Source: Octopus sinensis (Eukaryota). From it: a DNA stretch of 64,000 nucleotides. A model generated the notes under the pieces. That model was given only the letters and a program-made list of their open reading frames with translations. It had not been told where the DNA came from and ran no database searches. The stretch covers positions 39,494,001-39,558,000 of the forward strand of contig NC_043009.1 in assembly GCF_006345805.1 (NCBI RefSeq). Reading direction: 5' to 3'. Both the position numbers and the translations under genes were made by a program. Numbering within the stretch: the first letter of the stretch is position 1; every line of letters starts with the position of its first letter. Of the stretch, positions 9,053 to 62,592 are shown piece by piece.

Positions 9053-9092
9053 GGAAAGAAAAATTATTTAGATTAAAATATAAATGTAAAAT

Positions 9093-10430: not shown

Positions 10431-10870
10431 ATATCTAGTATAGATAAATACGAATACTAAAAGAAACAAATATAAAACTGGTTTCTGTCTTCAAGTGAGT
10501 TAACAAATACATGACAAGGCTAAGATATGATACAGCATCGACAAGGCTAAGATATGATATAGTTCTTCTTTAAGAAGAACTGAGAAATACCTACAGAAAT
10601 TATGAAAAAATAGAACTATTCTAAATTAATATATCATGCAACGACGGTGAAAAATAAAATATACAGTGGCAATATCTCATAAGACAGGATAAAGACTGAG
10701 AAATGTTGCATTTAAAGCTGTGACCAAGACGTACACAAATTATTTTCAAAACAGAATATAGAACACAAACAGGAATTGCAGATTATGTGGAGATTGCGAA
10801 GATGCAATTGAGTCCATTGTTTCTGGGAATCCATTCTTAGCTAACAAAAGAGAATACATACATATATATA

Positions 10871-11265
10871 GGCGCAGGAGTGGCTGTGTGGTAAGTAGCT
10901 TGCTAACCAACCACATGGTTCCGGGTTCATTCCCACTGCGTGGCATCTTGGGCAAGTGTCTTCTGCTATAGCCCCGGGCCGACCAATGCCTTGTGAGTGG
11001 ATTTGGTAGACGGAAACTGAAAGAAGCCTGTCGTATATATGTATATATATATATGTGTTGTGTGTCTGTGTTTGTCCCCCTAGCATTGCCTAACAACCGA
11101 TGCTGGGGTGTTTACGTCCCCGTCACTTAGCGGTTCGGCAAAAGAGACCGATAGAATAAGTACTGGGCTTACAAAGAATAAGTTCCGGGGTTGATTTGCT
11201 CGACTAAAGGCGGTGCTCCAGCATGGCCGCAGTCAAATGACTGAAACAACTAAAAGATTAAAAGA
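10871..11265 (+). mobile_element. tRNA-derived SINE family B, full length (head + internal microsatellite + 3' module)
   Basis: Head ggcgcaggagtggctgtgtggtaag...ggttcattccc, CORE-like cttgggcaagtgtctt, an internal (TA)/(TG) tract, and a 3' module ending ggcggtgctccagcatggccgcagtcaaatgactgaaac. Confidence 0.85.
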
Positions 11266-26864: not shown

Positions 26865-27260
26865 TATAAGGCGGCCATGCTGGGGCACCAGAGTGAAGAA
26901 TTTTTAACAGAATTGATTGACCCCAGTGTTTTTTTAAGTCTGATACTTATTCTATCCATTAAATTATGGGGACCTAAACACCATGGCTGGTTATCAGGCA
27001 ACAGTGGGGTACATAAAGACACACACACAAACACACACACACACACACACATATCCCGTCAGATATAAATAAATGTATGTGTGTGTGTGCGTGTGTGTAC
27101 GAAGGGTTTCTTTCAGATTTAGTCTAGCAAATCCAGTCACTAATCTTTGGTTGGCCCGACGCTATAGTAGAAGAAGACGCTTGCCCATGGTGCAACACAG
27201 TGGGACTGAACCCACATCCACGTCTGCGCCAACATGTGTGGCACTCAGATGAATCTGTTA
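26865..27260 (-). mobile_element. SINE family B, degenerate full-length copy
   Basis: The reverse complement contains the family B head/core (27095-27260), an internal CA tract and the 3' module gatagaataagtatc...ggtgccccagcatggccgcc (26865-26955). Confidence 0.65.
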
Positions 27261-34314: not shown

Positions 34315-34351
<37 letters not shown>

Positions 34352-34380
34352 GTATCTATGTAACTATCTATCTATCTAGC

Positions 34381-35253: not shown

Positions 35254-35297
35254 GTAACCCTCTGTTCCTTTCACTTGTATTCTAATTCATTGGGACT

Positions 35298-38200
35298 ATG
35301 ATCAAGATTAGTTGTGTAAATGCGCGTGGCTTGGGGTCCCCTTGGAAACAAGGGTACCTCTTAAATGACATAAAGTCACATAAGTTAGAAATCATAGCAA
35401 TAAGTGAGACCAGACTCCACAATCCGCGGGCCCTAAAGACCATGTTTGGCGGACAGTTCAACATTTATTTTTCCCCCTGTCTGCCGAGAATGGGCGGTAG
35501 TGGCACCGCGGTACTTTTTCACAAGAGTCTGGATCTCAAAGTAAGGACAATATTCGTAGACCCGGAGGGTAGACTGGTCGTCCTGGATGTCGACGGCAGC
35601 AATGGGTGCGCTTTTAGACTCGTATCAGTCTACGCACCGCCCTTAACAGGTCGGGCGGATTTCTTTCAACGTCTAGAAGTATTCTTGGGAACGTCTCGTC
35701 CTTTACTCTTAGTGGGGGATTGAAATGCTACCTTGGACACGCATGTAGACTACGTGGGTAGAGATAGGAATAGACGGGGATGCAAATGCCTCAGAGACCT
35801 GCTCAGACGCTTTCAACTGTCTGACAGGTTCCGACTAGACCACCCGAATGCGCCAACGTGGACATGGAGCAACCGCATCGGGTCGTCGAGATCGTATCTA
35901 GATAGGATACTGTGTAGGACAGTAGACAGAGATAGCATAGGATGTCCACAATTCCACATAGTCAGCTACACGGATCACAAACTTGTGACATGTACGCTAG
36001 ACTTAGGTAAGACACTTAGGCAGGGTCCGGATACTGGAAACTAAACGCGTCTTTCCCATCGAGACAGGTTTTCAGAGACCGGATTAGCACACTAGTAAAG
36101 AGGGCTTTGACGGGAGCCATCATCAACAACAAATGGTGGTTTGCCCTCAAGAGAGCAGTAAAAGCAGAAGCGATTAGATACAGCAAAGCACTAGCCATAG
36201 ATAGAAATAGAGTAGAGGGTGAGCTAGATAAGAAGCTAGAAGAGGCAATTAGAAGCGGCATCGCATCCGACGTTTTGGCGGCGAGGTTGGTCCTCGACCA
36301 ACACTTCAACGCCAAACACGAAGGATGTGCTGTCAGAGCTAGGATGCGTGCTCTAAGGAACGAAGGTGTTGGAGCCGCGAGAGAGGCCCGGGTGGCAGAG
36401 GCGCAACAGGGCAACAAAGCCACCATTCGGTCCCTGGTAGATGAACAGGGGCGCGAATTGCTCGAGCCAAGTAAAATGTGTGAGGCCTTTCAGCAGCATT
36501 TAGTCCGACTGTTCGGAACGAGTGGAGGGCAAGAACGTAGGGTGGACTTCAGTGCCTACCTACATAGCCTACCACGACTCTCGACAAGAAAGGCAGGGTG
36601 CTGCGAAGGTGCCATAACGGCGGCGGAAGTGCGGGAAGCGATGGCAGAATGCTCGAGGGACAAATCACCGGGTTTGGATGGTCTACCCTACGAGCTTTAC
36701 AATTGTATGCCAGACTTGTTTGGAGATCTCTTGGCGGTGGTGTACTGCAACTGGCAGCAAAACGGGAGCATTCCTGGTTTTGTGAGCCGAGGAGCCGTAA
36801 CACTGCTGAAGAAAGATCTAAACAAGGGAAATGTAATAGATAACTTTAGGCCCATCACTCTGCTTAATGCAGACTTGAAAATTTTGGCCAAGGTGCTAGC
36901 CAAGAGGTTGGCGCTTGTCATCGAGAAACTGGTCGACAGGGCGCAAACATGCGCCGTGCCAGGCCGGACCATCCATGACAACCTTCACCTGATGCGCTAC
37001 ATCATAGACAGGGTAGTTAACGAACCTGGCATGGGTGGGGCGCTGATCAATTTGGATCAATCGAAAGCTTTCGATAGGGTGGACTATCGATACTTGGAGG
37101 CGGTCCTCGGAGCGGCTGGCTTCGGTCCCGTCTTCCGCGGCTGGATAGCCGCTTTGTGCAGAGGCATCCGTTCGGTAATTCGCGTGAATGGACATCTATC
37201 GAGACCCTTCGACATCGCACGTTCGGTCCGTCAGGGATGCCCCCTCTCGTCGCTTCTATACGTATTGACTCTCGAGCCATTATTGCGGAAGCTGGCAACC
37301 TTGAGAGGCATCCCGCGAGAACTGGGATGCGGGACGAGCGTGTCTGCATACGCGGACGACGTCACCGTCATAGTGTCTAGCCACGAGCACATCGAGCTGG
37401 TCGGCGAGACACTGAAAAACTACGAAGCGGTGACAGGAGCGAAAATCAACCGGGAAAAGTCAGTGGGCTTGCGACTAGGCACCTGGAGAAGCAAGCCCAT
37501 GCTGTCCACCAGCGCCTCCGTCGTGGGACGCTGGACCGACGGCCCGGTTGAGTTGCTCGGGGTCTGGTTTGGTCCGGACCTCCAAGTGGAGAAGAACTGG
37601 AACGAGATAACGAGTAGGGTGGTCACTCTCGCCCGGCAATGGGCCGAGAGGAAACTGTCCCTAAAAGGTCGGGCGGAGGTGGCGAACACGTACATCACGT
37701 CCGTCATCTACCACCGCCAGACCATCGTACCTTGTCCCGACCCTACCATCACCAAACTACAACGCATTCTCTTTCGCTTCTTGTGGAAAGGATGCGTCCC
37801 GATGGTCAGGCGATCCATTTGCTGTCAACACCCGTTAAAAGGAGGGCTGGGCATGCCGTGGTTGATGATGCACAGACACGCGCTGAGACTGCGACATCTC
37901 GGCTCTATGTAGACGACGCGGTGAACAGGTGTGGTCGCCGTTTGTGAGGCACGCTTTCCCGCAGCTCGTCTCCATGACCGAACTGCAGTCGTGGATCACA
38001 AAGAGGCCGAGGAAGGGCGAATGGCACCGCGAGTGTCGCGTTGCTCTCAAGCAACTCTGCCGTCCTGGGTCGACCTTGAGTGACTTCAACACAACCAATG
38101 CATTCTATAGGGGTTTAGTAGAGGGGAGGTACGACGACGAGCTCGGGGCGAACCTGGACGTCGACGAGGAATACCTGACCCGCCTGTTCAGGACGACTTT

Positions 38201-38735
38201 CGGGCCAGGGCCCATGGACAACTTCCAGAGATCCCTGGCCTGGCAGTGCTACCGAGAAGCGCTACCCGTTCGGGATAAGCTCTACAGACACGGCTCGAGA
38301 AACACGGGGCCGACCTGCCCGAGATGCGGTCAGAGCGACGAAACCGTTCTGCACGCACTCGTGCAGTGTCCAACAATTTCCGGCCTGTGGGCTTGTGTCG
38401 AACAACTGCTGTCACGTGTGGGACGAGTCAGTTTATCAGCTGAGTCTATCGTCAATATTGTCACGCCTCCCTCCTTCAAACGGGAAGGAAGAGCTATTTT
38501 CATCATCCTTGTGGCTATGGTGAAAGAACGTATCTGGTTGACGCGTCTGAAAGGATTGGAGACAAACACTTTCCTCTCTGGTCAATCTCTCATCAACTTC
38601 TTCAAGTACGACTTGAAAAGGAAAGTGAGAGTAGAGAGGCAAGTTTTGTCTAGCGAATGTTTTAAAAAAAGATGGGTGAATGTAGCAAGAATGGCACGTA
38701 TGAATGACGAAGCCACCTTGAGCATGATCCTATGA
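35298..38735 (+). pseudogene. ORF2: APE endonuclease + reverse transcriptase + CCHC (one nonsense codon, at least two frameshifts)
   Basis: MIKISCVNARGL...AISETR; LVGD*NATLD (TGA at 35721); SYLDRIL...YTDHKLV; GP(G)YWKLN with a frameshift near 36030; FRPITLLNADLKILAK, LDQSKAFDRV, RQGCPLS, AYADD; frameshift(s) near 37900-37920; CPRCGQSDETVLHALVQC. Confidence 0.92.
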
Positions 38736-44422: not shown

Positions 44423-45235
44423 ATCAACAATCAAGGAACGGCCATAATAGGCCATTCACCCACTAGAAATAACAGCCAAAGCTTCAACCGCAAATAAAAA
44501 TCAATTCCGTAAACCAGGAGAAAGTTTAAAAAACATTTACCCTGTAATTTCTTATACGATGCACCGTTTCATCTGCTGTTTAATGGTAAACTAACCTGAT
44601 TAAATTAAATCAAGCCAATCTTCATAGGCCCTCAGATTCTTCAGTAAGAAATAGCCAAGTCGGAACAGATATTTTCACGAGGCATTTCCGACCCTGCCAA
44701 GGCAATATCTGACCTAAAATTTTCAAATCATCGCACTCGCGCCAAATTATCGGCAGCAAATAAATACAAGCCGTCGATTCCATTACGGAATTTGCTGGTG
44801 GCAAAAAAATTCTACAAAATTTTTTTTGCCACCCTATATTGATTAATTATGAATTTTCTTGTTAATTCCGTAATGGAATCGACGGCTTATATTTATTTGC
44901 TGCCGATAAATTTGGCGCGAGTGCGATGATTTGAAAATTTTAGGTCAGATATTGCCTTGGCAGGGTCGGAAATGCCTCGTGAAAATATCTGTTCCGACTT
45001 GGCTATTTCTTACTGAAGAATCTGAGGGCCTATGGAAGATTGGCTTGATTTAATTTAATCAGGTTAGTTTACCATTAAACAGCAGATGAAACGGTGCATC
45101 GTATAAGAAATTACAGGGTAAATGTTTTTTAAATTTTCTCCTGGTTTACGGAATTGATTTTTATTTGCGGTTGAAGCTTTGGCTGTTATTTCTAGTGGGT
45201 GAATGGCCTATTATGGCCGTTCCTTGATTGTTGAT
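44423..45235. repeat. 370-bp inverted repeat with a 71-bp spacer
   Basis: 44423-44792 is the reverse complement of 44864-45235, with about four differences by eye. Confidence 0.95.
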
Positions 45236-45830
45236 GTTGTAACTTAAAAATGGTCTATGACTATTTAATTTTTTCCCACTAGGCCGCTGGTGGCAAAAAA
45301 ATTCTACAAAATTTTTTTTGCCACCCTATATTGATTAATTATGAATTTTCTTGTTAATTCCGTAATGGAATCGACGGCTTATATTTATTTGCTGCCGATA
45401 AATTTGGCGCGAGTGCGATGATTTGAAAATTTTAGGTCAGATATTGCCTTGGCAGGGTCGGAAATGCCTCGTGAAAATATCTGTCCCGACTTGGCTATTT
45501 CTTACTGAAGAATCTGAGGGCCTATTGAAGATTGGCTTGATTTAATTTAATCAGGTTAGTTTACCATTTAACAGCAGATGAAACGGTGCATCGTATAAGA
45601 AATTACAGGGTAAATGTTTTTTAAATTTTCTCCTGGTTTACGGAATTGATTTTTATTTGCGGTTGAAGCTTTGGCTGTTATTTCTAGTGGGTGAATGGCC
45701 TATTATGGCCGTTCCTTGATTGTTGATGTTGAACTTAAAAATGGTCTATGACTATTTAATTTTTTCCCACTAGGCCGCTGGTGGCAAAAAAATTCTACAA
45801 AATTTTTTTTGCCACCCTATATTGATTAAT

Positions 45831-45833
<3 letters not shown>
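44794..45833. repeat. about 492-bp tandem duplication (about 2.1 units)
   Basis: Hairpin ggtggcaaaaaaa...tttttttgccacc recurs at 44797, 45289 and 45780; the intervening units are nearly identical. Confidence 0.95.
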
Positions 45834-45868
<35 letters not shown>

Positions 45869-45912
45869 TATATATTATATATACATACATATATATATAT
45901 ATATACATATAC

Positions 45913-45959
<47 letters not shown>

Positions 45960-45964
45960 TACTG

Positions 45965-45995
<31 letters not shown>

Positions 45996-46033
45996 TACTG
46001 TATAATATATATATAGATATATATAATATAATA

Positions 46034-46075
<42 letters not shown>

Positions 46076-46078
46076 TAC

Positions 46079-46109
<31 letters not shown>

Positions 46110-46130
46110 ATTATATATTATATATACAAA
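45834..46130. repeat. degenerate (TA)n microsatellite
   Basis: Direct inspection. Confidence 0.9.
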
Positions 46131-46414
46131 TTATAATCTGCGATATTAGTGAACCACAGAAGACATTCTGATCCGAAGCCTCGGTGATGCTTTCTTTTCC
46201 GATGTCTTTTTCTTTCACTGGTGGTGCATTAGCATGGCCAGAATATTGGCGATATCATAGACATTGGCAATGTCAAGGACGTTAGCGATATTATGGGCAT
46301 TGGCGATGTTATGGACTTCACGAACATGCAGTGTGAATGAGTGAACGTAATAGAATCAACAATCAATATGTTTCAATATTCTTATATATATATATAGATG
46401 TTGTAGAGATTCAT

Positions 46415-46675
46415 ATGCGTAGGCGTGGCCATATGGTAGGAAGCTTGCTTTCCAACCGATGGCTCCAGATGTGGTCGCAGTGCGTAGCACCTTCGGCAAT
46501 CGTCTTCTGCTATAACCCAGGACGACCGAAGCCATGAGAATGTATTTGGTAGATGGAAACTGAAAGAAACCCGTTGTTTATTTACCTATTTGTGTGTGCG
46601 GGAATGTATGCATGTATGTATGGATGGATGGGTGTCTTTGTGTCATTATGTTTCTGTTCATTTCCCCATCCCTTG
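46415..46675 (+). mobile_element. SINE family B head and internal microsatellite, directly upstream of the satellite array
   Basis: gcgtaggcgtggccatatggtaggaagcttgc...gtcttctgctata...atttggtagatggaaactgaaagaa aligns with 10871-11035. Confidence 0.8.
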
Positions 46676-49600
46676 ACGGCCGATGTTGGTTTGTTTAAGT
46701 TCTGTAACTTAGCGATTCGGCAATTGTGAAGTATAGAATAAGTACGCGGCTAAAAAAGAAAAATAGAGAATCTATTCGTTCGATTGGAATCTTCCAAGGC
46801 GCTACCCAAGTACGGCCGATGCTGGTTTGTTTAAGTTCTGTAGCTTAGCGATTCGGCAATTGTGAAGTATAGAATAAGTACGCGGCTAAAAAAGAAAAAT
46901 AGAGAATCTATTCGTTCGATTGGAATCTTCCAAGGCGCTACCCAAGTACGGCCGATGTTGGTTTGTTTAAGTTCTGTAACTTAGCGATTCGGCAATTGTG
47001 AAGTATAGAATAAGTACGCGGCTAACAAAGAAAAATAGAGAATCTATTCGTTCGATTGGAATCTTCCAAGGCGCTACCCAAGTACGGCCGATGTTGGTTT
47101 GTTTAAGTTCTGTAACTTAGCGATTCGGCAATTGTGAAGTATAGAATAAGTACGCGGCTAACAAAGAAAAATAGAGAATCGATTCGTTCGATTGGAATCT
47201 TCCAAGGCGCTACCCAAGTACGGCCGATGTTGGTTTGTTTAAGTTCTGTAACTTAGCGATTCGGCAATTGTGAAGTATAGAATAAGTACGCGGCTAAAAA
47301 AGAAAAATAGAGAATCGATTCGTTCGATTGGAATCTTCCAAGGCGCTACCCAAGTACGGCCGATGTTGGTTTGTTTAAGTTCTGTAACTTAGCGATTCGG
47401 CAATTGTGAAGTATAGAATAAGTAAGCGGCTAAAAAAGAAAAATAGAGAATCGATTCGTTCGATTGGAATCTTCCAAGGCGCTACCCAAGTACGGCCGAT
47501 GCTGGTTTGTTTAAGTTCTGTAACTTAGCGATTCGGCAATTGTGAAGTATAGAATAAGTACGCGGCTAAAAAAGAAAAATAGAGAATCTATTCGTTCGAT
47601 TGGAATCTTCCAAGGCGCTACCCAAGTACGGCCGATGTTGGTTTGTTTAAGTTCTGTAGCTTAGCGATTCGGCAATTGTGAAGTATAGAATAAGTACGCG
47701 GCGCTAAAAAAGAAAAATAGAGAATCGATTCGTTCGATTGGAATCTCCAAGGCGCTACCCAAGTACGGCCGATGTTGGTTTGTTTAAGTTCTGTAACTTA
47801 GCGATTCGGCAATTGTGAAGTATAGAATAAGTACGCGGCTAAAAAAGAAAAATAGAGAATCGATTCGTTCGATTGGAATCTTCCAAGGCGCCACCCAAGT
47901 ACGGCCGATGTTGGTTTGTTTAAGTTCTGTAACTTAGCGATTCGGCAATTGTGAAGTATAGAATAAGTACGCGGCTAAAAAAGAAAAATAGAGAATCGAT
48001 TCGTTCGATTGGAATCTTCCAAGGCGCCACCCAAGTACGGCCGATGTTGGTTTGTTTAAGTTCTGTAACTTAGCGATTCGGCAATTGTGAAGTATAGAAT
48101 AAGTACGCGGCTAAAAAAGAAAAATAGAGAATCGATTCGTTCGATTGGAATCTTCCAAGGCGCCACCCAAGTACGGCCGATGTTGGTTTGTTTAAGTTCT
48201 GTAACTTAGCGATTCGGCAATTGTGAAGTATAGAATAAGTACGCGGCTAAAAAAGAAAAATAGAGAATCGATTCGTTCGATTGGAATCTTCCAAGGCGCC
48301 ACCCAAGTACGGCCGATGTTGGTTTGTTTAAGTTCTGTAACTTAGCGATTCGGCAATTGTGAAGTATAGAATAAGTACGCGGCTAAAAAAGAAAAATAGA
48401 GAATCGATTCGTTCGATTGGAATCTTCCAAGGCGCCACCCAAGTACGGCCGATGTTGGTTTGTTTAAGTTCTGTAACTTAGCGATTCGGCAATTGTGAAG
48501 TATAGAATAAGTACGCGGCTAAAAAAGAAAAATAGAGAATCGATTCGTTCGATTGGAATCTTCCAAGGCGCTGCCCAAGTACGGCCGATGTTGGTTTGTT
48601 TAAGTTCTGTAACTTAGCGATTCGGCAATTGTGAAGTATAGAATAAGTACGCGGCTAAAAAAGAAAAATAGAGAATCGATTCGTTCGATTGGAATCTTCC
48701 AAGGCGCTACCCAAGTACGGCCGATGTTGTTTGTTTGTTTAAGTTCTGTAACTTAGCGATTCGGCAATTGTGAAGTATAGATAAGTACGCGGCGGCTAAA
48801 AAAGAAAAATAGAGAATCGATTCGTTCGATTGGAATCTTCCAAGGCGCTACCCAAGTACGGCCGATGTTGGTTTGTTTAAGTTCTGTAACTTAGCGATTC
48901 GGCAATTGTGAAGTATAGAATAAGTACGCGGCTAAAAAAGAAAAATAGAGAATCGATTCGTTCGATTGGAATCTTCCAAGGCGCTACCCAAGTACGGCCG
49001 ATGTTGGTTTGTTTAAGTTCTGTAACTTAGCGATTCGGCAATTGTGAAGTATAGAATAAGTACGCGGCTAAAAAAGAAAAATAGAGAATCGATTCGTTCG
49101 ATTGGAATTCCAAGGCGCTACCCAAGTACGGCCGATGTTGGTTTGTTTAAGTTCTGTAACTTAGCGATTCGGCAATTGTGAAGTATAGAATAAGTAGGCG
49201 GCTAACAAAGAAAAATAGAGAATCGATTCGTTCGATTGGAATCTTCCAAGGCGCTACCCAAGTACGGCCGATGTTGGTTTGTTTAAGTTCTGTAACTTAG
49301 CGATTCGGCAATTGTGAAGTATAGAATAAGTACGCGGCTAAAAAAGAAAAATAGAGAATCGATTCGTTCGATTGGAATCTTCCAAGGCGCTACCCAAGTA
49401 CGGCCGATGTTGGTTTGTTTAAGTTCTGTAACTTAGCGATTCGGCAATTGTGAAGTATAGAATAAGTACGCGGCTCTAAAAAAGAAAAATAGAGAATCGA
49501 TTCGTTCGATTGGAATCTTCCAAGGCGCTACCCAAGTACGGCCGATGTTGGTTTGTTTAAGTTCTGTAACTTAGCGATTCGGCAATTGTGAAGTATAGAA

Positions 49601-52600
49601 TAAGTAGGCGGCTAACAAAGAAAAATAGAGAATCGATTCGTTCGATTGGAATCTTCCAAGGCGCTACCCAAGTACGGCCGATGTTGGTTTGTTTAAGTTC
49701 TGTAACTTAGCGATTCGGCAATTGTGAAGTATAGAATAAGTACGCGGCTAAAAAAGAAAAATAGAGAATCGATTCGTTCGATTGGAATCTTCCAAGGCGC
49801 TACCCAAGTACGGCCGATGTTGGTTTGTTTAAGTTCTGTAACTTAGCGATTCGGCAATTGTGAAGTATAGAATAAGTAGGCGGCTAACAAAGAAAAATAG
49901 AGAATCGATTCGTTCGATTGGAATCTTCCAAGGCGCTACCCAAGTACGGCCGATGTTGGTTTGTTTAAGTTCTGTAACTTAGCGATTCGGCAATTGTGAA
50001 GTATAGAATAAGTACGCGGCTAAAAAAGAAAAATAGAGAATCGATTCGTTCGATTGGAATCTTCCAAGGCGCTACCCAAGTACGGCCGATGTTGGTTTGT
50101 TTAAGTTCTGTAACTTAGCGATTCGGCAATTGTGAAGTATAGAATAAGTACGCGGCTAAAAAAGAAAAATAGAGAATCGATTCGTTCGATTGGAATCTTC
50201 CAAGGCGCTACCCAAGTACGGCCGATGTTGGTTTGTTTAAGTTCTGTAACTTAGCGATTCGGCAATTGTGAAGTATAGAATAAGTAGGCGGCTAAAAAAG
50301 AAAAATAGAGAATCGATTCGTTCGATTGGAATCTTCCAAGGCGCTACCCAAGTACGGCCGATGTTGGTTTGTTTAAGTTCTGTAACTTAGCGATTCGGCA
50401 ATTGTGAAGTATAGAATAAGTACGCGGCTAACAAAGAAAAATAGAGAATCGATTCGTTCGATTGGAATCTTCCAAGGCGCTACCCAAGTACGGCCGATGT
50501 TGTTTGTTTAAGTTCTGTAACTTAGCGATTCGGCAATTGTGAAGTATAGAATAAGTACGCGGCTAAAAAAAAAATAGAGAATCGATTCGTTCGATTGGAA
50601 TCTTCCAAGGCGCTACCCAAGTACGGCCGATGTTGGTTTGTTTAAGTTCTGTAACTTAGCGATTCGGCAATTGTGAAGTATAGAATAAGTACGCGGCTAA
50701 AAAAGAAAAATAGAGAATCGATTCGTTCGATTGGAATCTTCCAAGGCGCTACCCAAGTACGGCCGATGTTGGTTTGTTTAAGTTCTGTAACTTAGCGATT
50801 CGGCAATTGTGAAGTATAGAATAAGTACGCGGCTAAAAAAGAAAAATAGAGAATCGATTCGTTCGATTGGAATCTTCCAAGGCGCTACCCAAGTACGGCC
50901 GATGTTGGTTTGTTTAAGTTCTGTAACTTAGCGATTCGGCAATTGTGAAGTATAGAATAAGTACGCGGCTAAAAAAGAAAAATAGAGAATCGATTCGTTC
51001 GATTGGAATCTTCCAAGGCGCTACCCAAGTACGGCCGATGTTGGTTTGTTTAAGTTCTGTAACTTAGCGATTCGGCAATTGTGAAGTATAGAATAAGTAC
51101 GCGGCTCTAAAAAAGAAAAATAGAGAATCGATTCGTTCGATTGGAATCTTCCAAGGCGCTACCCAAGTACGGCCGATGTTGGTTTGTTTAAGTTCTGTAG
51201 CTTAGCGATTCGGCAATTGTGAAGTATAGAATAAGTACGCGGCTAAAAAAGAAAAATAGAGAATCGATTCGTTCGATTGGAATCTTCCAAGGCGCTACCC
51301 AAGTACGGCCGATGTTGGTTTGTTTAAGTTCTGCAACTTAGCGATTCGGCAATTGTGAAGTATAGAATAAGTACGCGGCTAAAAAAGAAAAATAGAGAAT
51401 CGATTCGTTCGATTGGAATCTTCCAAGGCGCTACCCAAGTACGGCCGATGTTGGTTTGTTTAAGTTCTGTAACTTAGCGATTCGGCAATTGTGAAGTATA
51501 GAATAAGTACGCGGCTAACAAAGAAAAATAGAGAATCGATTCGTTCGATTGGAATCTTCCAAGGCGCTACCCAAGTACGGCCGATGTTGGTTTGTTTAAG
51601 TTCTGTAACTTAGCGATTCGGCAATTTGAAGTATAGAATAAGTACGCGGCTAAAAAAGAAAAATAGAGAATCGATTCGTTCGATTGGAATCTTCCAAGGC
51701 GCTACCCAAGTACGGCCGATGTTGGTTTGTTTAAGTACTGTAGCTTAGCGATTCGGCAATTGTGAAGTATAGAATAAGTACGCGGCTAAAAAAGAAAAAT
51801 AGAGAATCGATTCGTTCGATTGGAATCTTCCAAGGCGCTACCCAAGTACGGCCGATGTTGGTTTGTTTAAGTTCTGCAACTTAGCGATTCGGCAATTGTG
51901 AAGTATAGAATAAGTACGCGGCTAACAAAGAAAAATAGAGAATCGATTCGTTCGATTGGAATCTTCCAAGGCGCTACCCAAGTACGGCCGATGTTGGTTT
52001 GTTTAAGTTCTGTAACTTAGCGATTCGGCAATTGTGAAGTATACAATAAGTACGCGGCTAACAAAGAAAAATAGAGAATCGATTCGTTCGATTGGAATCT
52101 TCCAAGGCGCTACCCAAGTACGGCCGATGTTGGTTTGTTTAAGTTCTGCAACTTAGCGATCGGCAATTGTGAAGTATAGAATAAGTACGCGGCTAACAAA
52201 GAAAAATAGAGAATCGATTCGTTCGATTGGAATCTTCCAAGGCGCTACCCAAGTACGGCCGATGTTGGTTTGTTTAAGTTCTGTAACTTAGCGATTCGGC
52301 AATTGTGAAGTATACAATAAGTACGCGGCTAAAAAAGAAAAATAGAGAATCGATTCGTTCGATTGGAATCTTCCAAGGCGCTACCCAAGTACGGCCGATG
52401 TTGGTTTGTTAAGTTCTGTAACTTAGCGATTCGGCAATTGTGAAGTATAGAATAAGTACGCGGCTAAAAAAGAAAAATAGAGAATCGATTCGTTCGATTG
52501 GAATCTTCCAAGGCGCTACCCAAGTACGGCCGATGTTGGTTTGTTTAAGTTCTGTAACTTAGCGATTCGGCAATTGTGAAGTATAGAATAAGTACGCGGC

Positions 52601-55600
52601 TAAAAAAGAAAAATAGAGAATCGATTCGTTCGATTGGAATCTTCCAAGGCGCTACCCAAGTACGGCCGATGTTGGTTTGTTTAAGTTCTGTAACTTAGCG
52701 ATTCGGCAATTGTGAAGTATAGAATAAGTAGGCGGCTAACAAAGAAAAATAGAGAATCGATTCGTTCGATTGGAATCTTCCAAGGCGCTACCCAAGTACG
52801 GCCGATGTTGGTTTGTTTAAGTTCTGTAACTTAGCGATTCGGCAATTGTGAAGTATAGAATAAGTACGCGGCTAAAAAAGAAAAATAGAGAATCGATTCG
52901 TTCGATTGGAATCTTCCAAGGCGCTACCCAAGTACGGCCGATGTTGGTTTGTTTAAGTTCTGTAACTTAGCGATTCGGCAATTGTGAAGTATAGAATAAG
53001 TAGGCGGCTAAAAAAGAAAAATAGAGAATCGATTCGTTCGATTGGAATCTTCCAAGGCGCTACCCAAGTACGGCCGATGTTGGTTTGTTTAAGTTCTGTA
53101 ACTTAGCGATTCGGCAATTGTGAAGTATAGAATAAGTAGGCGGCTAAAAAAGAAAAATAGAGAATCGATTCGTTCGATTGGAATCTTCCAAGGCGCTGCC
53201 CAAGTACGGCCGATGTTGGTTTGTTTAAGTTCTGTAACTTAGCGATTCGGCAATTGTGAAGTATAGAATAAGTACGCGGCTAAAAAAGAAAAATAGAGAA
53301 TCGATTCGTTCGATTGGAATCTTCCAAGGCGCTACCCAAGTACGGCCGATGTTGGTTTGTTTAAGTTCTGTAACTTAGCGATTCGGCAATTGTGAAGTAT
53401 AGAATAAGTACGCGGCTAAAAAGAAAAATAGAGAATCGATTCGTTCGATTGGAATCTTCCAAGGCGCTACCCAAGTACGGCCGATGTTGGTTTGTTTAAG
53501 TTCTGTAACTTAGCGATTCGGCAATTGTGAAGTATAGAATAAGTAGGCGGCTAAAAAAGAAAAATAGAGAATCGATTCGTTCGATTGGAATCTTCCAAGG
53601 CGCTACCCAAGTACGGCCGATGTTGGTTTGTTTAAGTTCTGTAACTTAGCGATTCGGCAATTGTGAAGTATAGAATAAGTAGGCGGCTAAAAAAGAAAAA
53701 TAGAGAATCGATTCGTTCGATTGGAATCTTCCAAGGCGCTGCCCAAGTACGGCCGATGTTGGTTTGTTTAAGTTCTGTAACTTAGCGATTCGGCAATTGT
53801 GAAGTATAGAATAAGTACGCGGCTAAAAAAGAAAAATAGAGAATCGATTCGTTCGATTGGAATCTTCCAAGGCGCTACCCAAGTACGGCCGATGTTGGTT
53901 TGTTTAAGTTCTGTAACTTAGCGATTCGGCAATTGTGAAGTATAGAATAAGTAGGCGGCTAAAAAGAAAAATAGAGAATCGATTCGTTCGATTGGAATCT
54001 TCCAAGGCGCTACCAAGTACGGCCGATGTTGTTTTGTTAAGTTCTGTAACTTAGCGATTCGGCAATTGTGAAGTATAGAATAAGTACGCGGCTAAAAAAG
54101 AAAAATAGAGAATCGATTCGTTCGATTGGAATCTTCCAAGGCGCTACCCAAGTACGGCCGATGTTGGTTTGTTTAAGTTCTGTAACTTAGCGATTCGGCA
54201 ATTGTGAAGTATAGAATAAGTACGCGGCTAAAAAAGAAAAATAGAGAATCGATTCGTTCGATTGGAATCTTCCAAGGCGCTACCCAAGTACGGCCGATGT
54301 TGGTTTGTTTAAGTTCTGTAACTTAGCGATTCGGCAATTGTGAAGTATAGAATAAGTACGCGGCTAACAAAGAAAAATAGAGAATCGATTCGTTCGATTG
54401 GAATCTTCCAAGGCGCTACCCAAGTACGGCCGATGTTGTTTGTTTAAGTTCTGTAACTTAGCGATTCGGCAATTGTGAAGTATAGAATAAGTACGCGGCT
54501 AACAAAGAAAAATAGAGAATCGATTCGTTCGATTGGAATCTTCCAAGGCGCTACCCAAGTACGGCCGATGTTGGTTTGTTTAAGTTCTGTAACTTAGCGA
54601 TTCGGCAATTGTGAAGTATAGAATAAGTAGGCGGCTAACAAAGAAAAATAGAGAATCGATTCGTTCGATTGGAATCTTCCAAGGCGCTACCCAAGTACGG
54701 CCGATGTTGGTTTGTTTAAGTACTGTAACTTAGCGATTCGGCAATTGTGAAGTATAGAATAAGTAGGCGGCTAACAAAGAAAAATAGAGAATCGATTCGT
54801 TCGATTGGAATCTTCCAAGGCGCTACCCAAGTACGGCCGATGTTGGTTTGTTTAAGTACTGTAACTTAGCGATTCGGCAATTGTGAAGTATAGAATAAGT
54901 AGGCGGCTAACAAAAAGAAAAATAGAGAATCGATTCGTTCGATTGGAATCTTCCAAGGCGCTACCCAAGTACGGCCGATGGTTTGTTTGTTTAAGTTCTG
55001 TAACTTAGCGATTCGGCAATTGTGAAGTATAGAATAAGTAGGCGGCTAAAAAAAAAAAATAGAGAATCGATTCGTTCGATTGGAATCTTCCAAGGCGCTA
55101 CCCAAGTACGGCCGATGTTGGTTTGTTTAAGTTCTGTAACTTAGCGATTCGGCAATTGTGAAGTATAGAATAAGTAGGCGGCTAAAAAAGAAAAATAGAG
55201 AATCGATTCGTTCGATTGGAATCTTCCAAGGCGCTACCCAAGTACGGCCGATGTTGGTTTGTTTAAGTTCTGTAACTTAGCGATTCCGCAATTGTGAAGT
55301 ATAGAATAAGTAGGCGGCTAAAAAAGAAAAATAGAGAATCGATTCGTTCGATTGGAATCTTCCAAGGCGCTACCCAAGTACGGCCGATGTTGGTTTGTTT
55401 AAGTTCTGTAACTTAGCGATTCGGCAATTGTGAAGTATAGAATAAGTACGCGGCTAAAAAGAAAAATAGAGAATCGATTCGTTCGATTGGAATCTTCCAA
55501 GGCGCTACCCAAGTACGGCCGATGTTGGTTTGTTTAAGTTCTGTAACTTAGCGATTCGGCAATTGTGAAGTATAGAATAAGTACGCGGCCTAAAAAGAAA

Positions 55601-58600
55601 AATAGAGAATCGATTCGTTCGATTGGAATCTTCCAAGGCGCTACCCAAGTACGGCCGATGTTGGTTTGTTTAAGTTCTGTAACTTAGCGATTCGGCAATT
55701 GTGAAGTATAGAATAAGTACGCGGCTAAAAAAGAAAAATAGAGAATCGATTCGTTCGATTGGAATCTTCCAAGGCGCTACCCAAGTACGGCCGATGTTGG
55801 TTTGTTTAAGTTCTGTAACTTAGCGATTCGGCAATTGTGAAGTATAGAATAAGTACGCGGCTAAAAAAGAAAAATAGAGAATCGATTCGTTCGATTGGAA
55901 TCTTCCAAGGCGCTACCCAAGTACGGCCGATGTTGGTTGTTTAAGTTCTGTAACTTAGCGATTCGGCAATTGTGAAGTATAGTATAGAATAAGTACGCGG
56001 CTAACAAAGAAAAATAGAGAATCGATTCGTTCGATTGGAATCTTCCAAGGCGCTACCAAGTACGGCCGATGTTGGTTTGTTTAAGTTCTGTAACTTAGCG
56101 ATTCGGCAATTGTGAAGTATAGAATAAGTACGCGGCTAAAAAGAAAAATAGAGAATCGATTCGTTCGATTGGAATCTTCCAAGGCGCTACCCAAGTACGG
56201 CCGATGTTGGTTTGTTTAAGTTCTGTAACTTAGCGATTCGGCAATTGTGAAGTATAGTATAGAATAAGTAGGCGGCTAAAAAAAAGAAAAATAGAGAATC
56301 GATTCGTTCGATTGGAATCTTCCAAGGCGCTACCCAAGTACGGCCGATGTTGGTTTGTTTAAGTTCTGTAACTTAGCGATTCGGCAATTGTGAAGTATAG
56401 AATAAGTAGGCGGCTAAAAAGAAAAATAGAGAATCGATTCGTTCGATTGGAATCTTCCAAGGCGCTACCCAAGTACGGCCGATGTTGGTTTGTTTAAGTT
56501 CTGTAACTTAGCGATTCGGCAATTGTGAAGTATAGAATAAGTACGCGGCTAAAAAAGAAAATAGAGAATCGATTCGTTCGATTGGAATCTTCCAAGGCGC
56601 TACCCAAGTACGGCCGATGTTGGTTTGTTTAAGTTCTGTAACTTAGCGATTCGGCAATTGTGAAGTATAGAATAAGTACGCGGCTCTAAAAAAGAAAATA
56701 GAGAATCGATTCGTTCGATTGGAATCTTCCAAGGCGCTACCCAAGTACGGCCGATGTTGGTTTGTTTAAGTTCTGTAACTTAGCGATTCGGCAATTGTGA
56801 AGTAGTATAGAATAAGTAGGCGGCTAAAAAAAAGAAAAATAGAGAATCTATTCGTTCGATTGGAATCTTCCAAGGCGCTACCCAAGTACGGCCGATGTTG
56901 GTTTGTTTAAGTTCTGTAACTTAGCGATTCGGCAATTGTGAAGTATAGAATAAGTACGCGGCTAAAAAAGAAAAATAGAGAATCGATTCGTTCGATTGGA
57001 ATCTTCCAAGGCGCTACCCAAGTACGGCCGATGTTGGTTTGTTTAAGTTCTGTAACTTAGCGATTCGGCAATTGTGAAGTATAGAATAAGTACGCGGCTA
57101 AAAAAGAAAAATAGAGAATCTATTCGTTCGATTGGAATCTTCCAAGGCGCTACCCAAGTACGGCCGATGTTGGTTGTTTAAGTTCTGTAACTTAGCGATT
57201 CGGCAATTGTGAAGTATAGAATAAGTACGCGGCTAAAAAAGAAAAATAGAGAATCGATTCGTTCGATTGGAATCTTCCAAGGCGCTACCCAAGTACGGCC
57301 GATGTTGGTTTGTTTAAGTTCTGTAACTTAGCGATTCGGCAATTGTGAAGTATAGAATAAGTACGCGGCTAAAAAAGAAAAATAGAGAATCGATTCGTTC
57401 GATTGGAATCTTCCAAGGCGCTACCCAAGTACGGCCGATGTTGGTTTGTTAAGTTCTGTAACTTAGCGATTCGGCAATTGTGAAGTATAGAATAAGTACG
57501 CGGCTAAAAAAAAAAAATAGAGAATCGATTCGTTCGATTGGAATCTTCCAGGCGCTACCCAAGTACGGCCGATGTTGGTTGTTTAAGTTCTGTAACTTAG
57601 CGATTCGGCAATTGTGAAGTATAGAATAAGTACGCGGCTAAAAAAGAAAAATAGAGAATCGATTCGTTCGATTGGAATCTTCCAAGGCGCTACCCAAGTA
57701 CGGCCGATGTTGGTTTGTTAAGTTCTGTAACTTAGCGATTCGGCAATTGTGAAGTATAGAAGAAGTACGCGGCTAAAAAAGAAAAATAGAGAATCGATTC
57801 GTTCGATTGGAATCTTCCAAGGCGCTACCCAAGTACGGCCGATGTTGGTTTGTTTAAGTTCTGTAACTTAGCGATTCGGCAATTGTGAAGTATAGAATAA
57901 GTAGGCGGCTAACAAAGAAAAAATAGAGAATCGATTCGTTCGATTGGAATCTTCCAAGGCGCTACCCAAGTACGGCCGATGTTGGTGTTTGTTTAAGTTC
58001 TGTAACTTAGCGATTCGGCAATTGTGAAGTATAGAATAAGTACGCGGCTAAAAAAGAAAAATAGAGAATCTATTCGTTCGATTGGAATCTTCCAAGGCGC
58101 TACCCAAGTACGGCCGATGTTGTTTGTTTAAGTTCTGTTTCTGTAGCTTAGCGATTCGGCAATTGTGAAGTATAGAATAAGTACGCGGCTAAAAAAGAAA
58201 AATAGAGAATCGATTCGTTCGATTGGAATCTTCCAAGGCGCTACCCAAGTACGGCCGATGTTGGTTTGTTTAAGTTCTGTAACTTAGCGATTCGGCAATT
58301 GTGAAGTATAGAATAAGTACGCGGCTAACAAAGAAAAATAGAAATAGAGAATCTATTCGTTCGATTGGAATCTTCCAAGGCGCTACCCAAGTACGGCCGA
58401 TGTTGGTTTGTTTAAGTTCTGTAACTTAGCGATTCGGCAATTGTGAAGTATAGAATAAGTACGCGGCTAAAAAAGAAAAATAGAGAATCGATTCGTTCGA
58501 TTGGAATCTTCCAAGGCGCTACCCAAGTACGGCCGATGTTGGTTTGTTTAAGTTCTGTAGCTTAGCGATTCGGCAATTGTGAAGTATAGAATAAGTACGC

Positions 58601-61374
58601 GGCTAAAAAAGAAAAATAGAGAATCGATTCGTTCGATTGGAATCTTCCAAGGCGCTACCCAAGTACGGCCGATGTTGGTTTGTTTAAGTTCTGTAACTTA
58701 GCGATCAGCAATTGTGAAGTATAGAATAAGTACGCGGCTAAAAAGAAAAATAGAGAATCGATTCGTTCGATTGGAATCTTCCAAGGCGCTACCCAAGTAC
58801 GGCGATGTTGGTTTGTTTAAGTTCTGTAACTTAGCGATTCGGCAATTGTGAAGTATAGAATAAGTACGCGGCTAAAAAAGAAAAATAGAGAATCGATTCG
58901 TTCGATTGGAATCTTCCAAGGCGCTACCCAAGTACGGCCGATGTTGGTTGTTTAAGTTCTGTAACTTAGCGATTCGGCAATTGTGAAGTATAGAATAAGT
59001 AGGCGGCTAACAAAGAAAAATAGAGAATCGATTCGTTCGATTGGAATCTTCCAAGGCGCTACCCAAGTACGGCCGATGTTGGTTTGTTTAAGTTCTGTAG
59101 CTTAGCGATTCGGCAATTGTGAAGTATAGAATAAGTACGCGGCTAAAAAAGAAAAATAGAGAATCGATTCGTTCGATTGGAATCTTCCAAGGCGCTACCC
59201 AAGTACGGCCGATGTTGGTTTGTTAAGTTCTGTAACTTAGCGATTCAGCAATTGTGAAGTATAGAATAAGTACGCGGCTAAAAAGAAAAATAGAGAATCG
59301 ATTCGTTCGATTGGAATCTTCCAAGGCGCTACCCAAGTACGGCCGATGTTGGTTTGTTTAAGTTCTGTAACTTAGCGATTCGGCAATTGTGAAGTATAGA
59401 ATAAGTACGCGGCTCTAAAAAAGAAAAATAGAGAATCGATTCGTTCGATTGGAATCTTCCAAGGCGCTACCCAAGTACGGCCGATGTTGGTTTGTTTAAG
59501 TTCTGTAACTTAGCGATTCAGCAATTGTGAAGTATAGAAAAGTACGCGGCTTAAAAAAGAAAAATAGAGAATCGATTCGTTCGATTGGAATCTTCCAAGG
59601 CGCTACCCAAGTACGGCCGATGTTGGTTGTTTAAGTTCTGTAACTTAGCGATTCGGCAATTGTGAAGAGTATAGAATAAGTACGCGGCTAAAAAAGAAAA
59701 ATAGAGAATCGATTCGTTCGATTGGAATCTTCCAAGGCGCTACCCAAGTACGGCGATGTTGGTTTGTTTAAGTTCTGTAGCTTAGCGATTCGGCAATTGT
59801 GAAGTATAGAATAAGTACGCGGCTAAAAAGAAAAATAGAGAATCGATTCGTTCGATTGGAATCTTCCAAGGCGCTACCCAAGTACGGCCGATGTTGTTTG
59901 TTTAAGTTCTGTAGCTTAGCGATTCGGCAATGTGAAGTATAGAATAAGTAGGCGGCTAACAAAGAAAAATAGAGAATCGATTCGTTCGATTGGAATCTTC
60001 CAAGGCGCTACCCAAGTACGGCCGATGTTGGTTTGTTTAAGTTCTGTAGCTTAGCGATTCAGCAATTGTGAAGTATAGAATAAGTACGCGGCTAAAAAAG
60101 AAAAATAGAGAATCGATTCGTTCGATTGGAATCTTCCAAGGCGCTACACAAGTACGGCCGATGTTGGTTTGTTTAAGTTCTGTAACTTAGCGATTCGGCA
60201 ATTGTGAAGTATAGAATAAGTAGGCGGCTAACAAAGAAAAATAGAGAATCTATTCGTTCGATTGGAATCTTCCAAGGCGCTACCCAAGTACGGCCGATGT
60301 TGGTTTGTTTAAGTTCTGTAACTTAGCGATTCAGCAATTGTGAAGTATAGAATAAGTACGCGGCTAAAAAGAAAAATAGAGAATCGATTCGTTCGATTGG
60401 ATCTTTCCAAGGCGCTACCCAAGTACGGCCGATGTTGGTTTGTTTAAGTTCTGTAGCTTAGCGATTCGGCAATTGTGAAGTATAGAATAAGTAGGCGGCT
60501 AACAAAGAAAAATAGAGAATCGATTCGTTCGATTGGAATCTTCCAAGGCGCTACCCAAGTACGGCCGATGTTGGTTGTTTGTTTAAGTTCTGTAGCTTAG
60601 CGATTCGGCAATTGTGAAGTATAGAATAAGTACGCGGCTAAAAAAGAAAAATAGAGAATATATTCGTTCGATTGGAATCTTCCAAGGCGCTACCCAAGTA
60701 CGCCGATGTTGGTTTGTTTAAGTTCTGTAACTTAGCGATTCGGCAATTGTGAAGTATAGAATAAGTACGCGGCTAAAAAAGAAAAATAGAGAATCGATTC
60801 GTTCGATTGGAATCTTCCAAGGCGCTACCCAAGTACGGCCGATGTTGGTTTGTTTAAGTTCTGTAACTTAGCGATTCGGCAATTGTGAAGTATAGAATAA
60901 GTACGCGGCTAAAAAAGAAAAATAGAGAATCGATTCGTTCGATTGGAATCTTCCAAGGCGCTACCCAAGTACGGCCGATGTTGGTTTGTTTAAGTTCTGT
61001 AACTTAGCGATTCGGCAATTGTGAAGTATAGAATAAGTAGGCGGCTAACAAAGAAAAATAGAGAATCGATTCGTTCGATTGGAATCTTCCAAGGCGCTAC
61101 CCAAGTACGGCCGATGTTGGTTTGTTTAAGTTCTGTAGCTTAGCGATTCGGCAATTGTGAAGTATAGAATAAGTAGGCGGCTAAAACAGAAAAATAGAGA
61201 ATCGATTCGTTCGATTGGAATCTTCCAAAGCGCTACCCAAGTACGGCCGATGTTGGTTTGTTTAAGTTCTGTAGCTTAGCGATTCGGCAATTGTGAAGTA
61301 TAGAATAACTACGCGGCTAAAAAAGAAAAATACAGAATCTATTCGTTCGATTGGAATCTTCCAAGGCGCCACCC
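46676..61374. repeat. satellite array, 136-bp unit, about 108 copies
   Basis: Unit gtacggccgatgttggtttgtttaagttctgtaacttagcgattcggcaattgtgaagtatagaataagtacgcggctaaaaaagaaaaatagagaatcgattcgttcgattggaatcttccaaggcgctacccaa. Period of 136 measured at 48035/48171/48307; 14699/136 is about 108. Confidence 0.98.
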
Positions 61375-61422
61375 GAGCATGACCGCAACAAATGAAACAA
61401 GTCAAAAACTGGAAATAAAGGA
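61375..61422 (+). mobile_element. SINE family B terminal segment closing the array
   Basis: gagcatgaccgcaacaaatgaaacaagtcaaaa resembles cagcatggccgcagtcaaatgactgaaacaactaaaa (11220-11260). Confidence 0.7.
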
Positions 61423-61744
61423 TATATATAATATTTATACAGTGTAGGAGCTGAATGAAGCATTTGTCGTTTGTTCATTTATGCTTATGGAAAGATTACA
61501 CGAATGAAATTCATCGGAGTATAATGGAATAAAGGGATAAATATGCCAGCATGACTTTCTGGCTCAGAATTTCGCTTAGCCAGAACATTGTTTCGGTTTC
61601 AGTAGAACTGCCTGGCACTTTCAGCGAGTCTATTCCTCTGTCCCAGGCCAACTATTAAAATGTGTGTGAATTTAGGTGAAGGAATGTTGAAGCCCAATAC
61701 ACATACATACATACATACATGCATGTATATATATATATATATAT

Positions 61745-62097
61745 AAAAGGTAAAGGTAAAGACCCCCTTCGGTCATGAATGGCCATGGGATTGCACCTAG
61801 AAAGTTACCCTCCTAGTCACAAGTCTGGGCAAGGTTGTTTATGGAAGACCAGCAGTCGCCCATGCATACCAGCCTCCCCTCTCCACGCCACCAGTGTTAT
61901 CCAAGGGAAAGGCAAAGGGGCCGATACAGCTTGGCACCTGTGACGTCGCAACTCATTTCTACAGATGAGTGAACTGGAGCAACGTGAAATAAAGTGCCTT
62001 GCTCAAGAACACAACACGCAGCCCGGTCCCGGATTCGAGCTCACAACCTCACAATCGTAAGCTCGACGCTCTAACCACTGAGCCATGCGCCTTCACA
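61745..62097 (-). mobile_element. tRNA-derived SINE family A, full length, with (CTTTAC)n tail
   Basis: Minus strand tgtgaaggcgcatggctcagtggttagagcg...gagctcgaatcc, CORE-like ttcttgagcaaggcacttt, tail ctttacctttacctttt. Confidence 0.85.
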
Positions 62098-62592
62098 TAT
62101 ATATATATATATATACATATGTGTGTGTGTATGTGTGCGTGTGTGTGTGTCTATATGCGTCTGTGTGTGTCTCTGTATGTGTTTATGTATGCACATAATT
62201 ATCTATGTATGCTTATGTGTTTTGTGTTTGTGTTTCTTCCTCACAACCGCTTGACAACCAGTTGTTGTTTTTATTCTTTCTCGATAACCTGTGGTTCGGC
62301 AAAACAAACCCATAGGGTGAGTATTTATTTGACTACGCCCTTCAACACGTTGCCCCTGTCTCGGCACAGTTCGGTGAATGAAATAAGTAAAGGATAAAAC
62401 ATTAAAAGCTCCGAATTTTTTTATTTAATGTTCACTACATTAATAATGCGATAGTTTACTAGCTACTGTTTTTTATGCAGATGGAGTGTCTAGAGTACTT
62501 ATCTTTAATCTTTTGTTGCTGAGTTTTTACATATATTAATTACTCAAGCCTGTGCGTCTATTGTATATAACCTCTCGAAAGAGCTGTTCTTC

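What the first reader, a model, noticed from the sequence alone, without database searches (positions are those of the whole stretch)
46415..61422. A 14.7-kb satellite born inside a single SINE copy: one 400-bp SINE inflated to about 15 kb
Seen in sequence: the 136-bp unit is homologous to the 3' module of the family B SINE at 11097-11230 (gtaacttagcgattcggcaa vs gtcacttagcggttcggcaa; atagaataagtac identical; ggctaacaaagaa vs ggcttacaaagaa). The SINE head lies directly upstream (46415-46675) and the SINE terminus directly downstream (61375-61422), so head, array and tail read as one element. The unit junction cccaagtacggccg resembles the terminal cccgagcatgaccg (10/14), and the SINE has GGCCG-like motifs at both ends of the amplified segment. 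Inference: an initial duplication through this short homology was followed by local expansion. TE-derived satellites are known in general, but a locus retaining both ancestral flanks and the founding junction shows the origin directly.
Basis: partly seen in the sequence, partly recalled or inferred. Interest (0 to 1): 0.8.

Follow-up and report, generated by a model that had tools for sequence, protein, structure and literature searches.

The report
SINE-derived 136-bp satellite array
An internal 136-bp piece of one old SINE retrotransposon copy in a cephalopod (octopod-like) genome has been copied head-to-tail 108 times into a 14.7-kb satellite still flanked by that SINE's head and tail; it is a clean example of a phenomenon already described in reptiles and a limpet.

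Summary
TRF finds one uninterrupted array at 46676-61374: period 136, 108 copies, 97% matches. The unit is homologous to the 3' module of a dispersed SINE family (local score 68 against 16.7±2.2 for shuffles; nhmmer E=2.5e-13). Head, one unit and tail align collinearly with the full copy at 10870-11262. Head and amplified module are equally diverged from that copy (77% and 76%), while units differ by only about 2%. Of 107 junctions, 92 are identical and the rest listed are one-step variants, so the array descends from one founding duplication. In-situ expansion inside one SINE copy is therefore well supported.

The proposed founding short homology is no better than chance (p≈0.2), and the crossover lies just outside GGCCG with at most 1-2 nt of microhomology. 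Whether this is the only or first locus could not be tested, because every external search was null and uninformative.

The class is known: SINE-derived satellites in squamates (Vassetzky 2023), including rare loci that keep both SINE termini, and PcH-sat in Patella (2024). This is a new member of a known kind, possibly the first in a cephalopod. Interest is moderate to low.

The parts
46415..46675 (+). 5' part of the host SINE copy: tRNA-like head, conserved core, and the family's variable internal TG/TA-rich stretch, ending at the 5' border ...CCCTTG|ACGGCCGATG
   Evidence: nhmmer E=8.7e-26 to SINE positions 3-186. 77% identity to the 10870 copy. Collinear alignment.
46676..61374 (+). Satellite array: 108 head-to-tail units of about 136 bp, derived from roughly positions 224-356 of the full SINE copy at 10870-11262 (its 3' module)
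   Evidence: TRF. Segmentation and consensus. z=23 against shuffles. 2.0% mean pairwise substitution, 65 distinct unit sequences, no higher-order period.
46802..46818 (+). First copy of the novel unit-to-unit junction CTACCCAAGT|ACGGCCG. The left 9 nt resemble the 3' border and the right 7 nt are identical to the 5' border.
   Evidence: 92 of 107 junctions are identical and the other listed variants are one-step derivatives. Sequence read.
61243..61374 (+). Last unit (u108), the most diverged from consensus (8 differences, tied with four internal units). It reads straight into the SINE terminus.
61375..61425 (+). 3' terminus of the host SINE copy (…GAGCATGACCGCAACAAATGAAACAAGTCAAAAACTGGAAATAAAGGA), followed by TA-rich flank
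   Evidence: Aligns to the family 3' end CCAGCATGGCCGCAGTCAAATGACTGAAACAA…
10870..11262 (+). Full-length unexpanded copy of the same SINE family, used as reference. Its module 11096-11205 is the best match to the unit outside the array.
26866..27223 (-). Second near-full copy of the family, carrying a single 3' module
   Evidence: nhmmer E=2.6e-31. Alignment A1.

Best explanation
This is a SINE-derived satellite that arose and grew in place inside one old copy of a dispersed SINE in a cephalopod (octopod-like) genome.

Step 1 (inferred): a roughly 400-bp SINE inserted in a TA-rich site.

Step 2 (inferred from the junction): one illegitimate event duplicated an internal 136-bp segment of its 3' module. 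Candidates are replication slippage or template switching, or end-joining. The event used at most 1-2 nt of microhomology and created the new junction …CCCAAGT|ACGGCCG….

Step 3 (supported by array statistics): once two units existed, unequal sister-chromatid or homologue exchange, slippage and gene conversion expanded and homogenised the array to 108 units (14.7 kb). The unduplicated SINE head and tail stayed as flanks.

No function is indicated. It is most likely a neutral by-product of repeat instability. The host copy's B-box region is degenerate by eye, so Pol III transcription from the head is unlikely.
For: There is one uninterrupted array. Head, one unit and tail are collinear with the full SINE (A1). 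Unit homology to the SINE module is z=23 and E=2.5e-13.

The array copy's head and module are equally diverged from the reference copy, 77% and 76%, within the 67-82% range seen among dispersed copies. Units differ by about 2%.

The junction is identical in 92 of 107 cases, so all units share one founding event. The right side of the junction (ACGGCCGATG) equals this copy's own 5' border, whereas the five other copies in the window read ACAACCGATG or other variants.

Four-gamete configurations occur at 11 of the 21 pairs of common variant sites. There are local variant runs (128C in units 9-13) and insertion variants shared by non-adjacent units, with no higher-order period. These fit ongoing unequal exchange or conversion.

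Outside the array, the 49 kb of window holds only single modules inside ordinary SINE copies.
Against: No target-site duplication brackets head and tail, because both flanks are TA-rich (p=0.47-0.88). A single insertion event is therefore inferred from collinearity, not proven.

The genome-wide distribution of the unit is unknown. In squamates, such satellites are usually multi-locus (PMC10702118).

Array length and contiguity rest on an assembly I cannot check. The excess of homopolymer-length variants, and the higher variability of the right half, could partly be sequencing error.
Confidence: 0.8

Rival explanations
1. This locus is one of many arrays of a genome-wide SINE-derived satellite family and is not the birthplace. 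A SINE subfamily whose master copy already carried a 2-3-unit internal duplication may have retrotransposed to many sites and expanded independently, or arrays may have spread by ectopic exchange or eccDNA.
For: In squamates most sSat families occupy tens to thousands of loci, with homogeneity between loci. Retained head and tail would also be expected for a retrotransposed pre-duplicated SINE. My tests for other loci were all uninformative.
Against: None of the six other family copies or fragments in the window carries even a dimer. The GG at the 5' border/junction is private to this copy among those sampled. The sample is only 49 kb.
Confidence: 0.25
2. The first duplication arose at the RNA/cDNA level, by reverse-transcriptase template switching during retrotransposition. 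The copy would then have inserted already as a dimer, and only later expansion was DNA-based.
For: The junction has minimal microhomology, which is compatible with template jumps. SINEs with internal duplications are known (PMC10702118, discussion).
Against: There is nothing specific. It is indistinguishable from DNA-level slippage with these data.
Confidence: 0.15
3. Assembly artefact: the array is mis-sized, or the head and tail were joined to it chimerically.
For: A 14.7-kb array of 98%-identical units is hard to assemble. Frequent 1-nt homopolymer-length variants (positions 15 and 77) and a noisier right half could reflect read errors.
Against: There are 65 distinct unit sequences, with recurrent shared substitutions and shared multi-base insertions (CTCT in u21, u33 and u94; TATAGTATAG in u69 and u71). 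Both edges pass seamlessly and in phase into SINE sequence.
Confidence: 0.07
4. Reverse direction: a pre-existing satellite monomer was captured as the 3' module of the SINE family.
For: Only the shared sequence itself.
Against: The module is single-copy in every dispersed SINE and is as diverged as the rest of the SINE (67-82%). The array is young (2%), and it is flanked in phase by SINE head and tail.
Confidence: 0.03

Closest known systems
SINE-derived satellites (sSats) of squamate reptiles, from Squam1/2/3 SINEs (Vassetzky, Kosushkin & Ryskov 2023, Mob DNA, PMC10702118)
   Same: Both are tandem arrays whose unit is an internal portion of a tRNA-type SINE. Terminal units run on into the SINE terminus. 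Unit homogeneity is far above that of dispersed SINE copies and rises with array length. Arrays reach hundreds of units. The proposed pathway is the same: primary duplication, amplification, then homogenisation.
   Different: The host is a cephalopod mollusc and the SINE family is unrelated. The unit is 136 bp from the 3' module (the snake sSat3 unit is 67 nt from head and body). Both SINE termini are retained here, which is only a minor variant in squamates. The number of loci and the chromosomal position are unknown here.
PcH-sat of the limpet Patella caerulea, derived from a Nin-SINE (Petraccioli et al. 2024, PMC11121367)
   Same: It is a molluscan satellite whose monomer contains a large segment of a tRNA-type SINE that lacks the Pol III boxes.
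   Different: PcH-sat is an abundant (about 10% of the genome), pericentromeric, multi-chromosome satellite with a 179-bp monomer. No founding locus with SINE flanks was shown. Here there is a single 14.7-kb locus with both flanks and unknown abundance.
Satellites and tandem arrays inside other non-autonomous TEs (bivalve Helentron/MITE-borne repeats; cited from my own knowledge, with reviews cited in PMC11121367 and PMC10702118)
   Same: A TE-internal segment serves as the seed of a tandem array.
   Different: In those cases the arrays are carried and dispersed by the mobile element. A 15-kb SINE cannot be retrotransposed, so this array must have grown in place.

Membership tests
SINE-derived satellite (sSat sensu Vassetzky et al. 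2023) | Head-to-tail tandem array whose unit is homologous to part of a SINE | tested here: met
   (z=23; E=2.5e-13)
SINE-derived satellite (sSat sensu Vassetzky et al. 2023) | Terminal unit(s) extend into SINE sequence up to the SINE terminus | tested here: met
   Both ends do: head 46415-46675 and tail 61375 to about 61425
SINE-derived satellite (sSat sensu Vassetzky et al. 2023) | Units much more alike than dispersed copies of the parent SINE | tested here: met
   About 98% between units against 67-82% between dispersed copies
SINE-derived satellite (sSat sensu Vassetzky et al. 2023) | Multiple loci per genome with a subtelomeric bias | not testable with these tools
   The source genome is not available. 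Searches were null and uninformative.
Classical satellite DNA | Long array (over 10 kb) of homogeneous monomers | tested here: met
   14,699 bp, 108 units
Classical satellite DNA | High genomic abundance and heterochromatic location | not testable with these tools
   Needs the whole genome, or FISH
tRNA-derived SINE | Many dispersed copies of a non-coding element a few hundred bp long | tested here: met
   Seven copies or fragments in 49 kb
tRNA-derived SINE | tRNA-related head with Pol III A and B boxes | tested here: inconclusive
   ARAGORN found no tRNA and Rfam gave no tRNA hit at E<=10. A-box-like TGGCTGTGTGG and B-box-like GGTTCATTCCC are seen only by eye in the 10870 copy. The B-box region is degenerate in the array copy.
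tRNA-derived SINE | Target-site duplications | tested here: inconclusive
   Array copy: none above chance. Reference copy: a possible 23-nt TA-rich match (20/23), with no shuffle control and in low-complexity sequence.
CORE-SINE superfamily (octopus OR1/OR2 are assigned to it in PMC4824008 and PMC4758252) | Shared CORE central domain | tested here: inconclusive
A roughly 100-nt core is shared with Argonauta hians elements.

The most novel reading that the evidence does not exclude
This may be the single birth locus of a young, lineage-specific satellite, and the first SINE-derived satellite documented in a cephalopod. It would be caught with both ancestral flanks and its founding junction intact. 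Sister species or other individuals would then carry the same SINE unexpanded or with different unit counts, giving a natural series for watching a satellite being born.
Probability: 0.35. Interest if true: 0.5.

Novelty: new member of a known kind. Interest (0 to 1): 0.35.

Why it matters
It extends SINE-derived satellites beyond squamates and a limpet to cephalopods. Vassetzky et al. explicitly left open whether they occur outside squamates. The locus is unusually legible: host SINE head, founding junction, 108 units and tail are all preserved. That lets the breakpoint of the first duplication be mapped to 1-2 nt and shows that it needed essentially no homology. If the locus proves unique and variable between individuals or species, it would be a convenient model for the early steps of satellite genesis. 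It does not reveal a new mechanism.

Tried and rejected
(1) A target-site duplication, to prove a single insertion: nothing above chance, because the flanks are TA-rich.

(2) Founding homology between the two borders: 10/17, p≈0.2, so rejected as evidence.

(3) Higher-order repeat structure: the lag profile is flat.

(4) Slippage-prone secondary structure of the unit: ssDNA fold z=-0.28.

(5) Finding the satellite elsewhere. An exact lookup of the array's accidental 40-aa ORF and a fuzzy protein search with it found nothing. A satellite 24-mer found nothing in JGI metagenomes. The SINE-core control pattern also found nothing. The collection therefore probably holds little or no DNA carrying this SINE family, and these nulls say nothing about copy number. 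One JGI sample does carry a related cephalopod-type LINE, so the control is imperfect.

(6) Exact lookups of the LINE ORFs, to find the source assembly: not on record.

(7) tRNA ancestry of the head by Rfam and ARAGORN: no hit.

(9) An orthology anchor: no host gene in the window, only TE ORFs.

(10) The unit in Argonauta hians: absent from the 43 kb sampled. Only the SINE core is shared.

Full report
**Observation**

Tandem Repeats Finder reports a single array at 46676-61374 with period 136, 108.0 copies, 97% matches and 1% indels. I segmented it into 108 units of 133-143 bp, 67 of them exactly 136 bp, and derived a 136-nt consensus. All the quoted sequence matches are present.

**Homology to the SINE**

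A full-length copy of a dispersed element lies at 10870-11262. The unit consensus aligns to its 3' module with local score 68. A thousand dinucleotide shuffles gave 16.7±2.2 with a maximum of 30, so z=23. A profile of all units finds 11096-11205 at E=2.5e-13.

I built a composite of the upstream flank (46415-46675), the last unit and the downstream flank. It aligns collinearly with the whole reference copy, from the first base of the head to the A-rich terminus. nhmmer places 46417-46598 on SINE positions 3-186 at E=8.7e-26.

The window holds five further copies or fragments of the family:
- 26866-27223 (−)
- 8861-9051 (+)
- 16284-16443 (−)
- 62198-62398 (+)
- heads at 3107-3238 and 61563-61722

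Each has at most one 3' module, and none is even dimeric. The multiple alignment also shows that the unit is homologous to the family across a stretch (…AAACCCTTCA…) that the 10870 copy happens to have lost.

**One element, one history**

The array copy's head is 77% identical to the reference copy, and its module plus tail is 76% identical. Both values sit within the 67-82% range seen between any two dispersed copies. Units differ from each other by only 2.0% in substitutions. Head, amplified segment and tail therefore share the age of an old insertion, while the present array was expanded or homogenised much more recently.

A rough timing follows from the calibration published for Octopus vulgaris TEs (JC 0.065≈18 My, 0.2≈56 My; PMC13282606). 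Pairwise divergence of about 23% between copies gives roughly 35-40 My per lineage. The 2% between units gives roughly 3 My. This is an order-of-magnitude inference only, because the species is unknown.

**Junction**

Of 107 unit-to-unit junctions, 92 read CGCTACCCAAGT|ACGGCCGATG, and the other listed variants are one-step derivatives. All units therefore descend from a single founding duplication.

The right side, ACGGCCGATG, is identical to this copy's own 5' border (…CCCTTG|ACGGCCGATG, 46670-46685). The five other family copies read ACAACCGATG, ATAACCAG and so on at that position, so the GG is private to this copy within the sample. The left side, CTACCCAAG, matches the 3' border (CCACCCGAG) at 7 of 9 positions. 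The switch between the two lies within 1-2 nt, just upstream of GGCCG.

However, the best 17-mer match between the two border windows (10/17) is equalled in 20% of shuffles. The first duplication was therefore an illegitimate, essentially homology-independent event, not one driven by a short repeat. The unit has no unusual single-strand structure (z=-0.28).

**Array dynamics**

There are 65 distinct unit sequences, and the commonest occurs 20 times. Mean distance does not depend on lag up to about 50 units and rises slightly beyond, so there is no higher-order repeat.

Common variants are scattered, with some local runs such as 128C in units 9-13. Eleven of the 21 pairs of common sites show all four allele combinations. 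Multi-base insertion variants recur in non-adjacent units: CTCT in u21, u33 and u94, and TATAGTATAG in u69 and u71. This is the signature of repeated unequal exchange or gene conversion, rather than one burst followed by independent decay.

The right half is more variable than the left (3.4 against 2.1 substitutions per pair). The last unit carries 8 differences from consensus, the joint-highest count among units kept in register (tied with four internal units), which fits weaker homogenisation at array edges.

**What could not be shown**

- No target-site duplication brackets the element, because both ends abut TA-rich sequence.
- The head is not recognised as tRNA by ARAGORN or Rfam. A-box and B-box-like motifs are seen only by eye.
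- Genome-wide distribution is untested. The array's 40-aa accidental ORF is not on record, exactly or approximately. A satellite 24-mer and a SINE-core control both found nothing in the metagenome collection, so those nulls are uninformative.

**Taxon**

A LINE at about 34.3-38.7 kb has an RT ORF whose best named relatives are from Argonauta hians (67%) and Acanthosepion pharaonis. The closest unnamed hit (71%) is in assembly GCA_024449705.1.

Forty-three kb of A. hians DNA contain three elements that share only the roughly 100-nt core of this SINE (positions 50-170), with unrelated 3' halves and no satellite unit. The window is therefore from a cephalopod, probably an octopod other than Argonauta. 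The literature assigns octopus OR1/OR2 SINEs to the CORE superfamily. My test of that assignment was inconclusive.

**Comparison with what is known**

Vassetzky et al. 2023 (PMC10702118) describe SINE-derived satellites in 56 squamate genomes:
- units taken from part of a SINE;
- a longer terminal unit reaching the SINE terminus at one end, or rarely at both;
- up to about 1000 units;
- homogeneity that rises with length;
- many loci, often subtelomeric.

They note that occurrence outside squamates is uncertain. Petraccioli et al. 2024 (PMC11121367) trace an abundant limpet satellite to a Nin-SINE. I found no paper on cephalopod satellites or SINE-derived arrays in the library.

The present locus meets every sequence-level criterion of an sSat. 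Locus number and chromosomal position could not be tested.

**Verdict**

The feature is real and the core reading is right. The mechanistic detail (founding homology) is not supported, and the claim of a unique birth locus is open. This is a new member of a known kind and of moderate interest, mainly as a very clean worked example and a possible first for cephalopods.

Noticed in passing
window 44423-45833: A near-perfect palindrome: left arm 44423-44792 and right arm 44864-45235 (about 370 nt, 96-100% complementary, 71-nt spacer). The right arm lies inside a 492-bp unit repeated 2.1 times at 99% identity (44794-45833). It could be a foldback-like element or a recent inverted-plus-tandem duplication.
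   Followed up: partly
window 45831-46316: (TA)~152 at 45831-46126 and an 18-bp x4 minisatellite at 46245-46316 lie directly upstream of the SINE head. Together with the palindrome, this gives an unusual concentration of tandem and inverted structures within 2 kb of the satellite. That may mark a replication-stress-prone neighbourhood, which is speculation.
   Followed up: no
window 46676-61374: The satellite unit is CpG-rich for its composition: 10 CpG in 136 bp at 40% GC, observed/expected 1.87. The rest of the window is 0.82 and the other SINE modules are 0.18-1.08. This could mean a lack of germline methylation or a young age. It rests on a single 136-bp sequence, so the statistical support is weak.
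   Followed up: partly
window 61563-62398: Another family-B SINE just downstream appears split: head at 61563-61722 and 3' part at 62198-62398. The split is caused by a minus-strand insertion of a second SINE family with a clear tRNA-like head (61746-62100), placed in the family's central microsatellite. Copies of that second family also lie at 2859-3108 and 9091-9251, each next to a family-B fragment.
   Followed up: partly
window 10870-11262 and the other family copies; L003 3972-4088, 4861-4946, 6333-6450: The SINE family is modular: head, a conserved core of about 100 nt, a variable internal (TA)n/(TG)n microsatellite, and a 3' module. Argonauta hians elements share only the core, with unrelated 3' halves, which suggests module shuffling among octopod SINEs.
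   Followed up: partly
window 34252-38735; also 20800-21195, 557-1126, 29931-31476: A LINE with endonuclease, RT and zf-RVT regions is split over several ORFs (35298-35723, 35733-36044, 36107-37912, 37929-38735) and preceded by a (TCTA)n tract. A 3' fragment of the same LINE sits at about 20.8-21.2 kb, also after (TCTA)n. Unrelated RT fragments lie at 557-1126 (+) and 29931-31476 (−). No host gene was seen in the window.
   Followed up: partly
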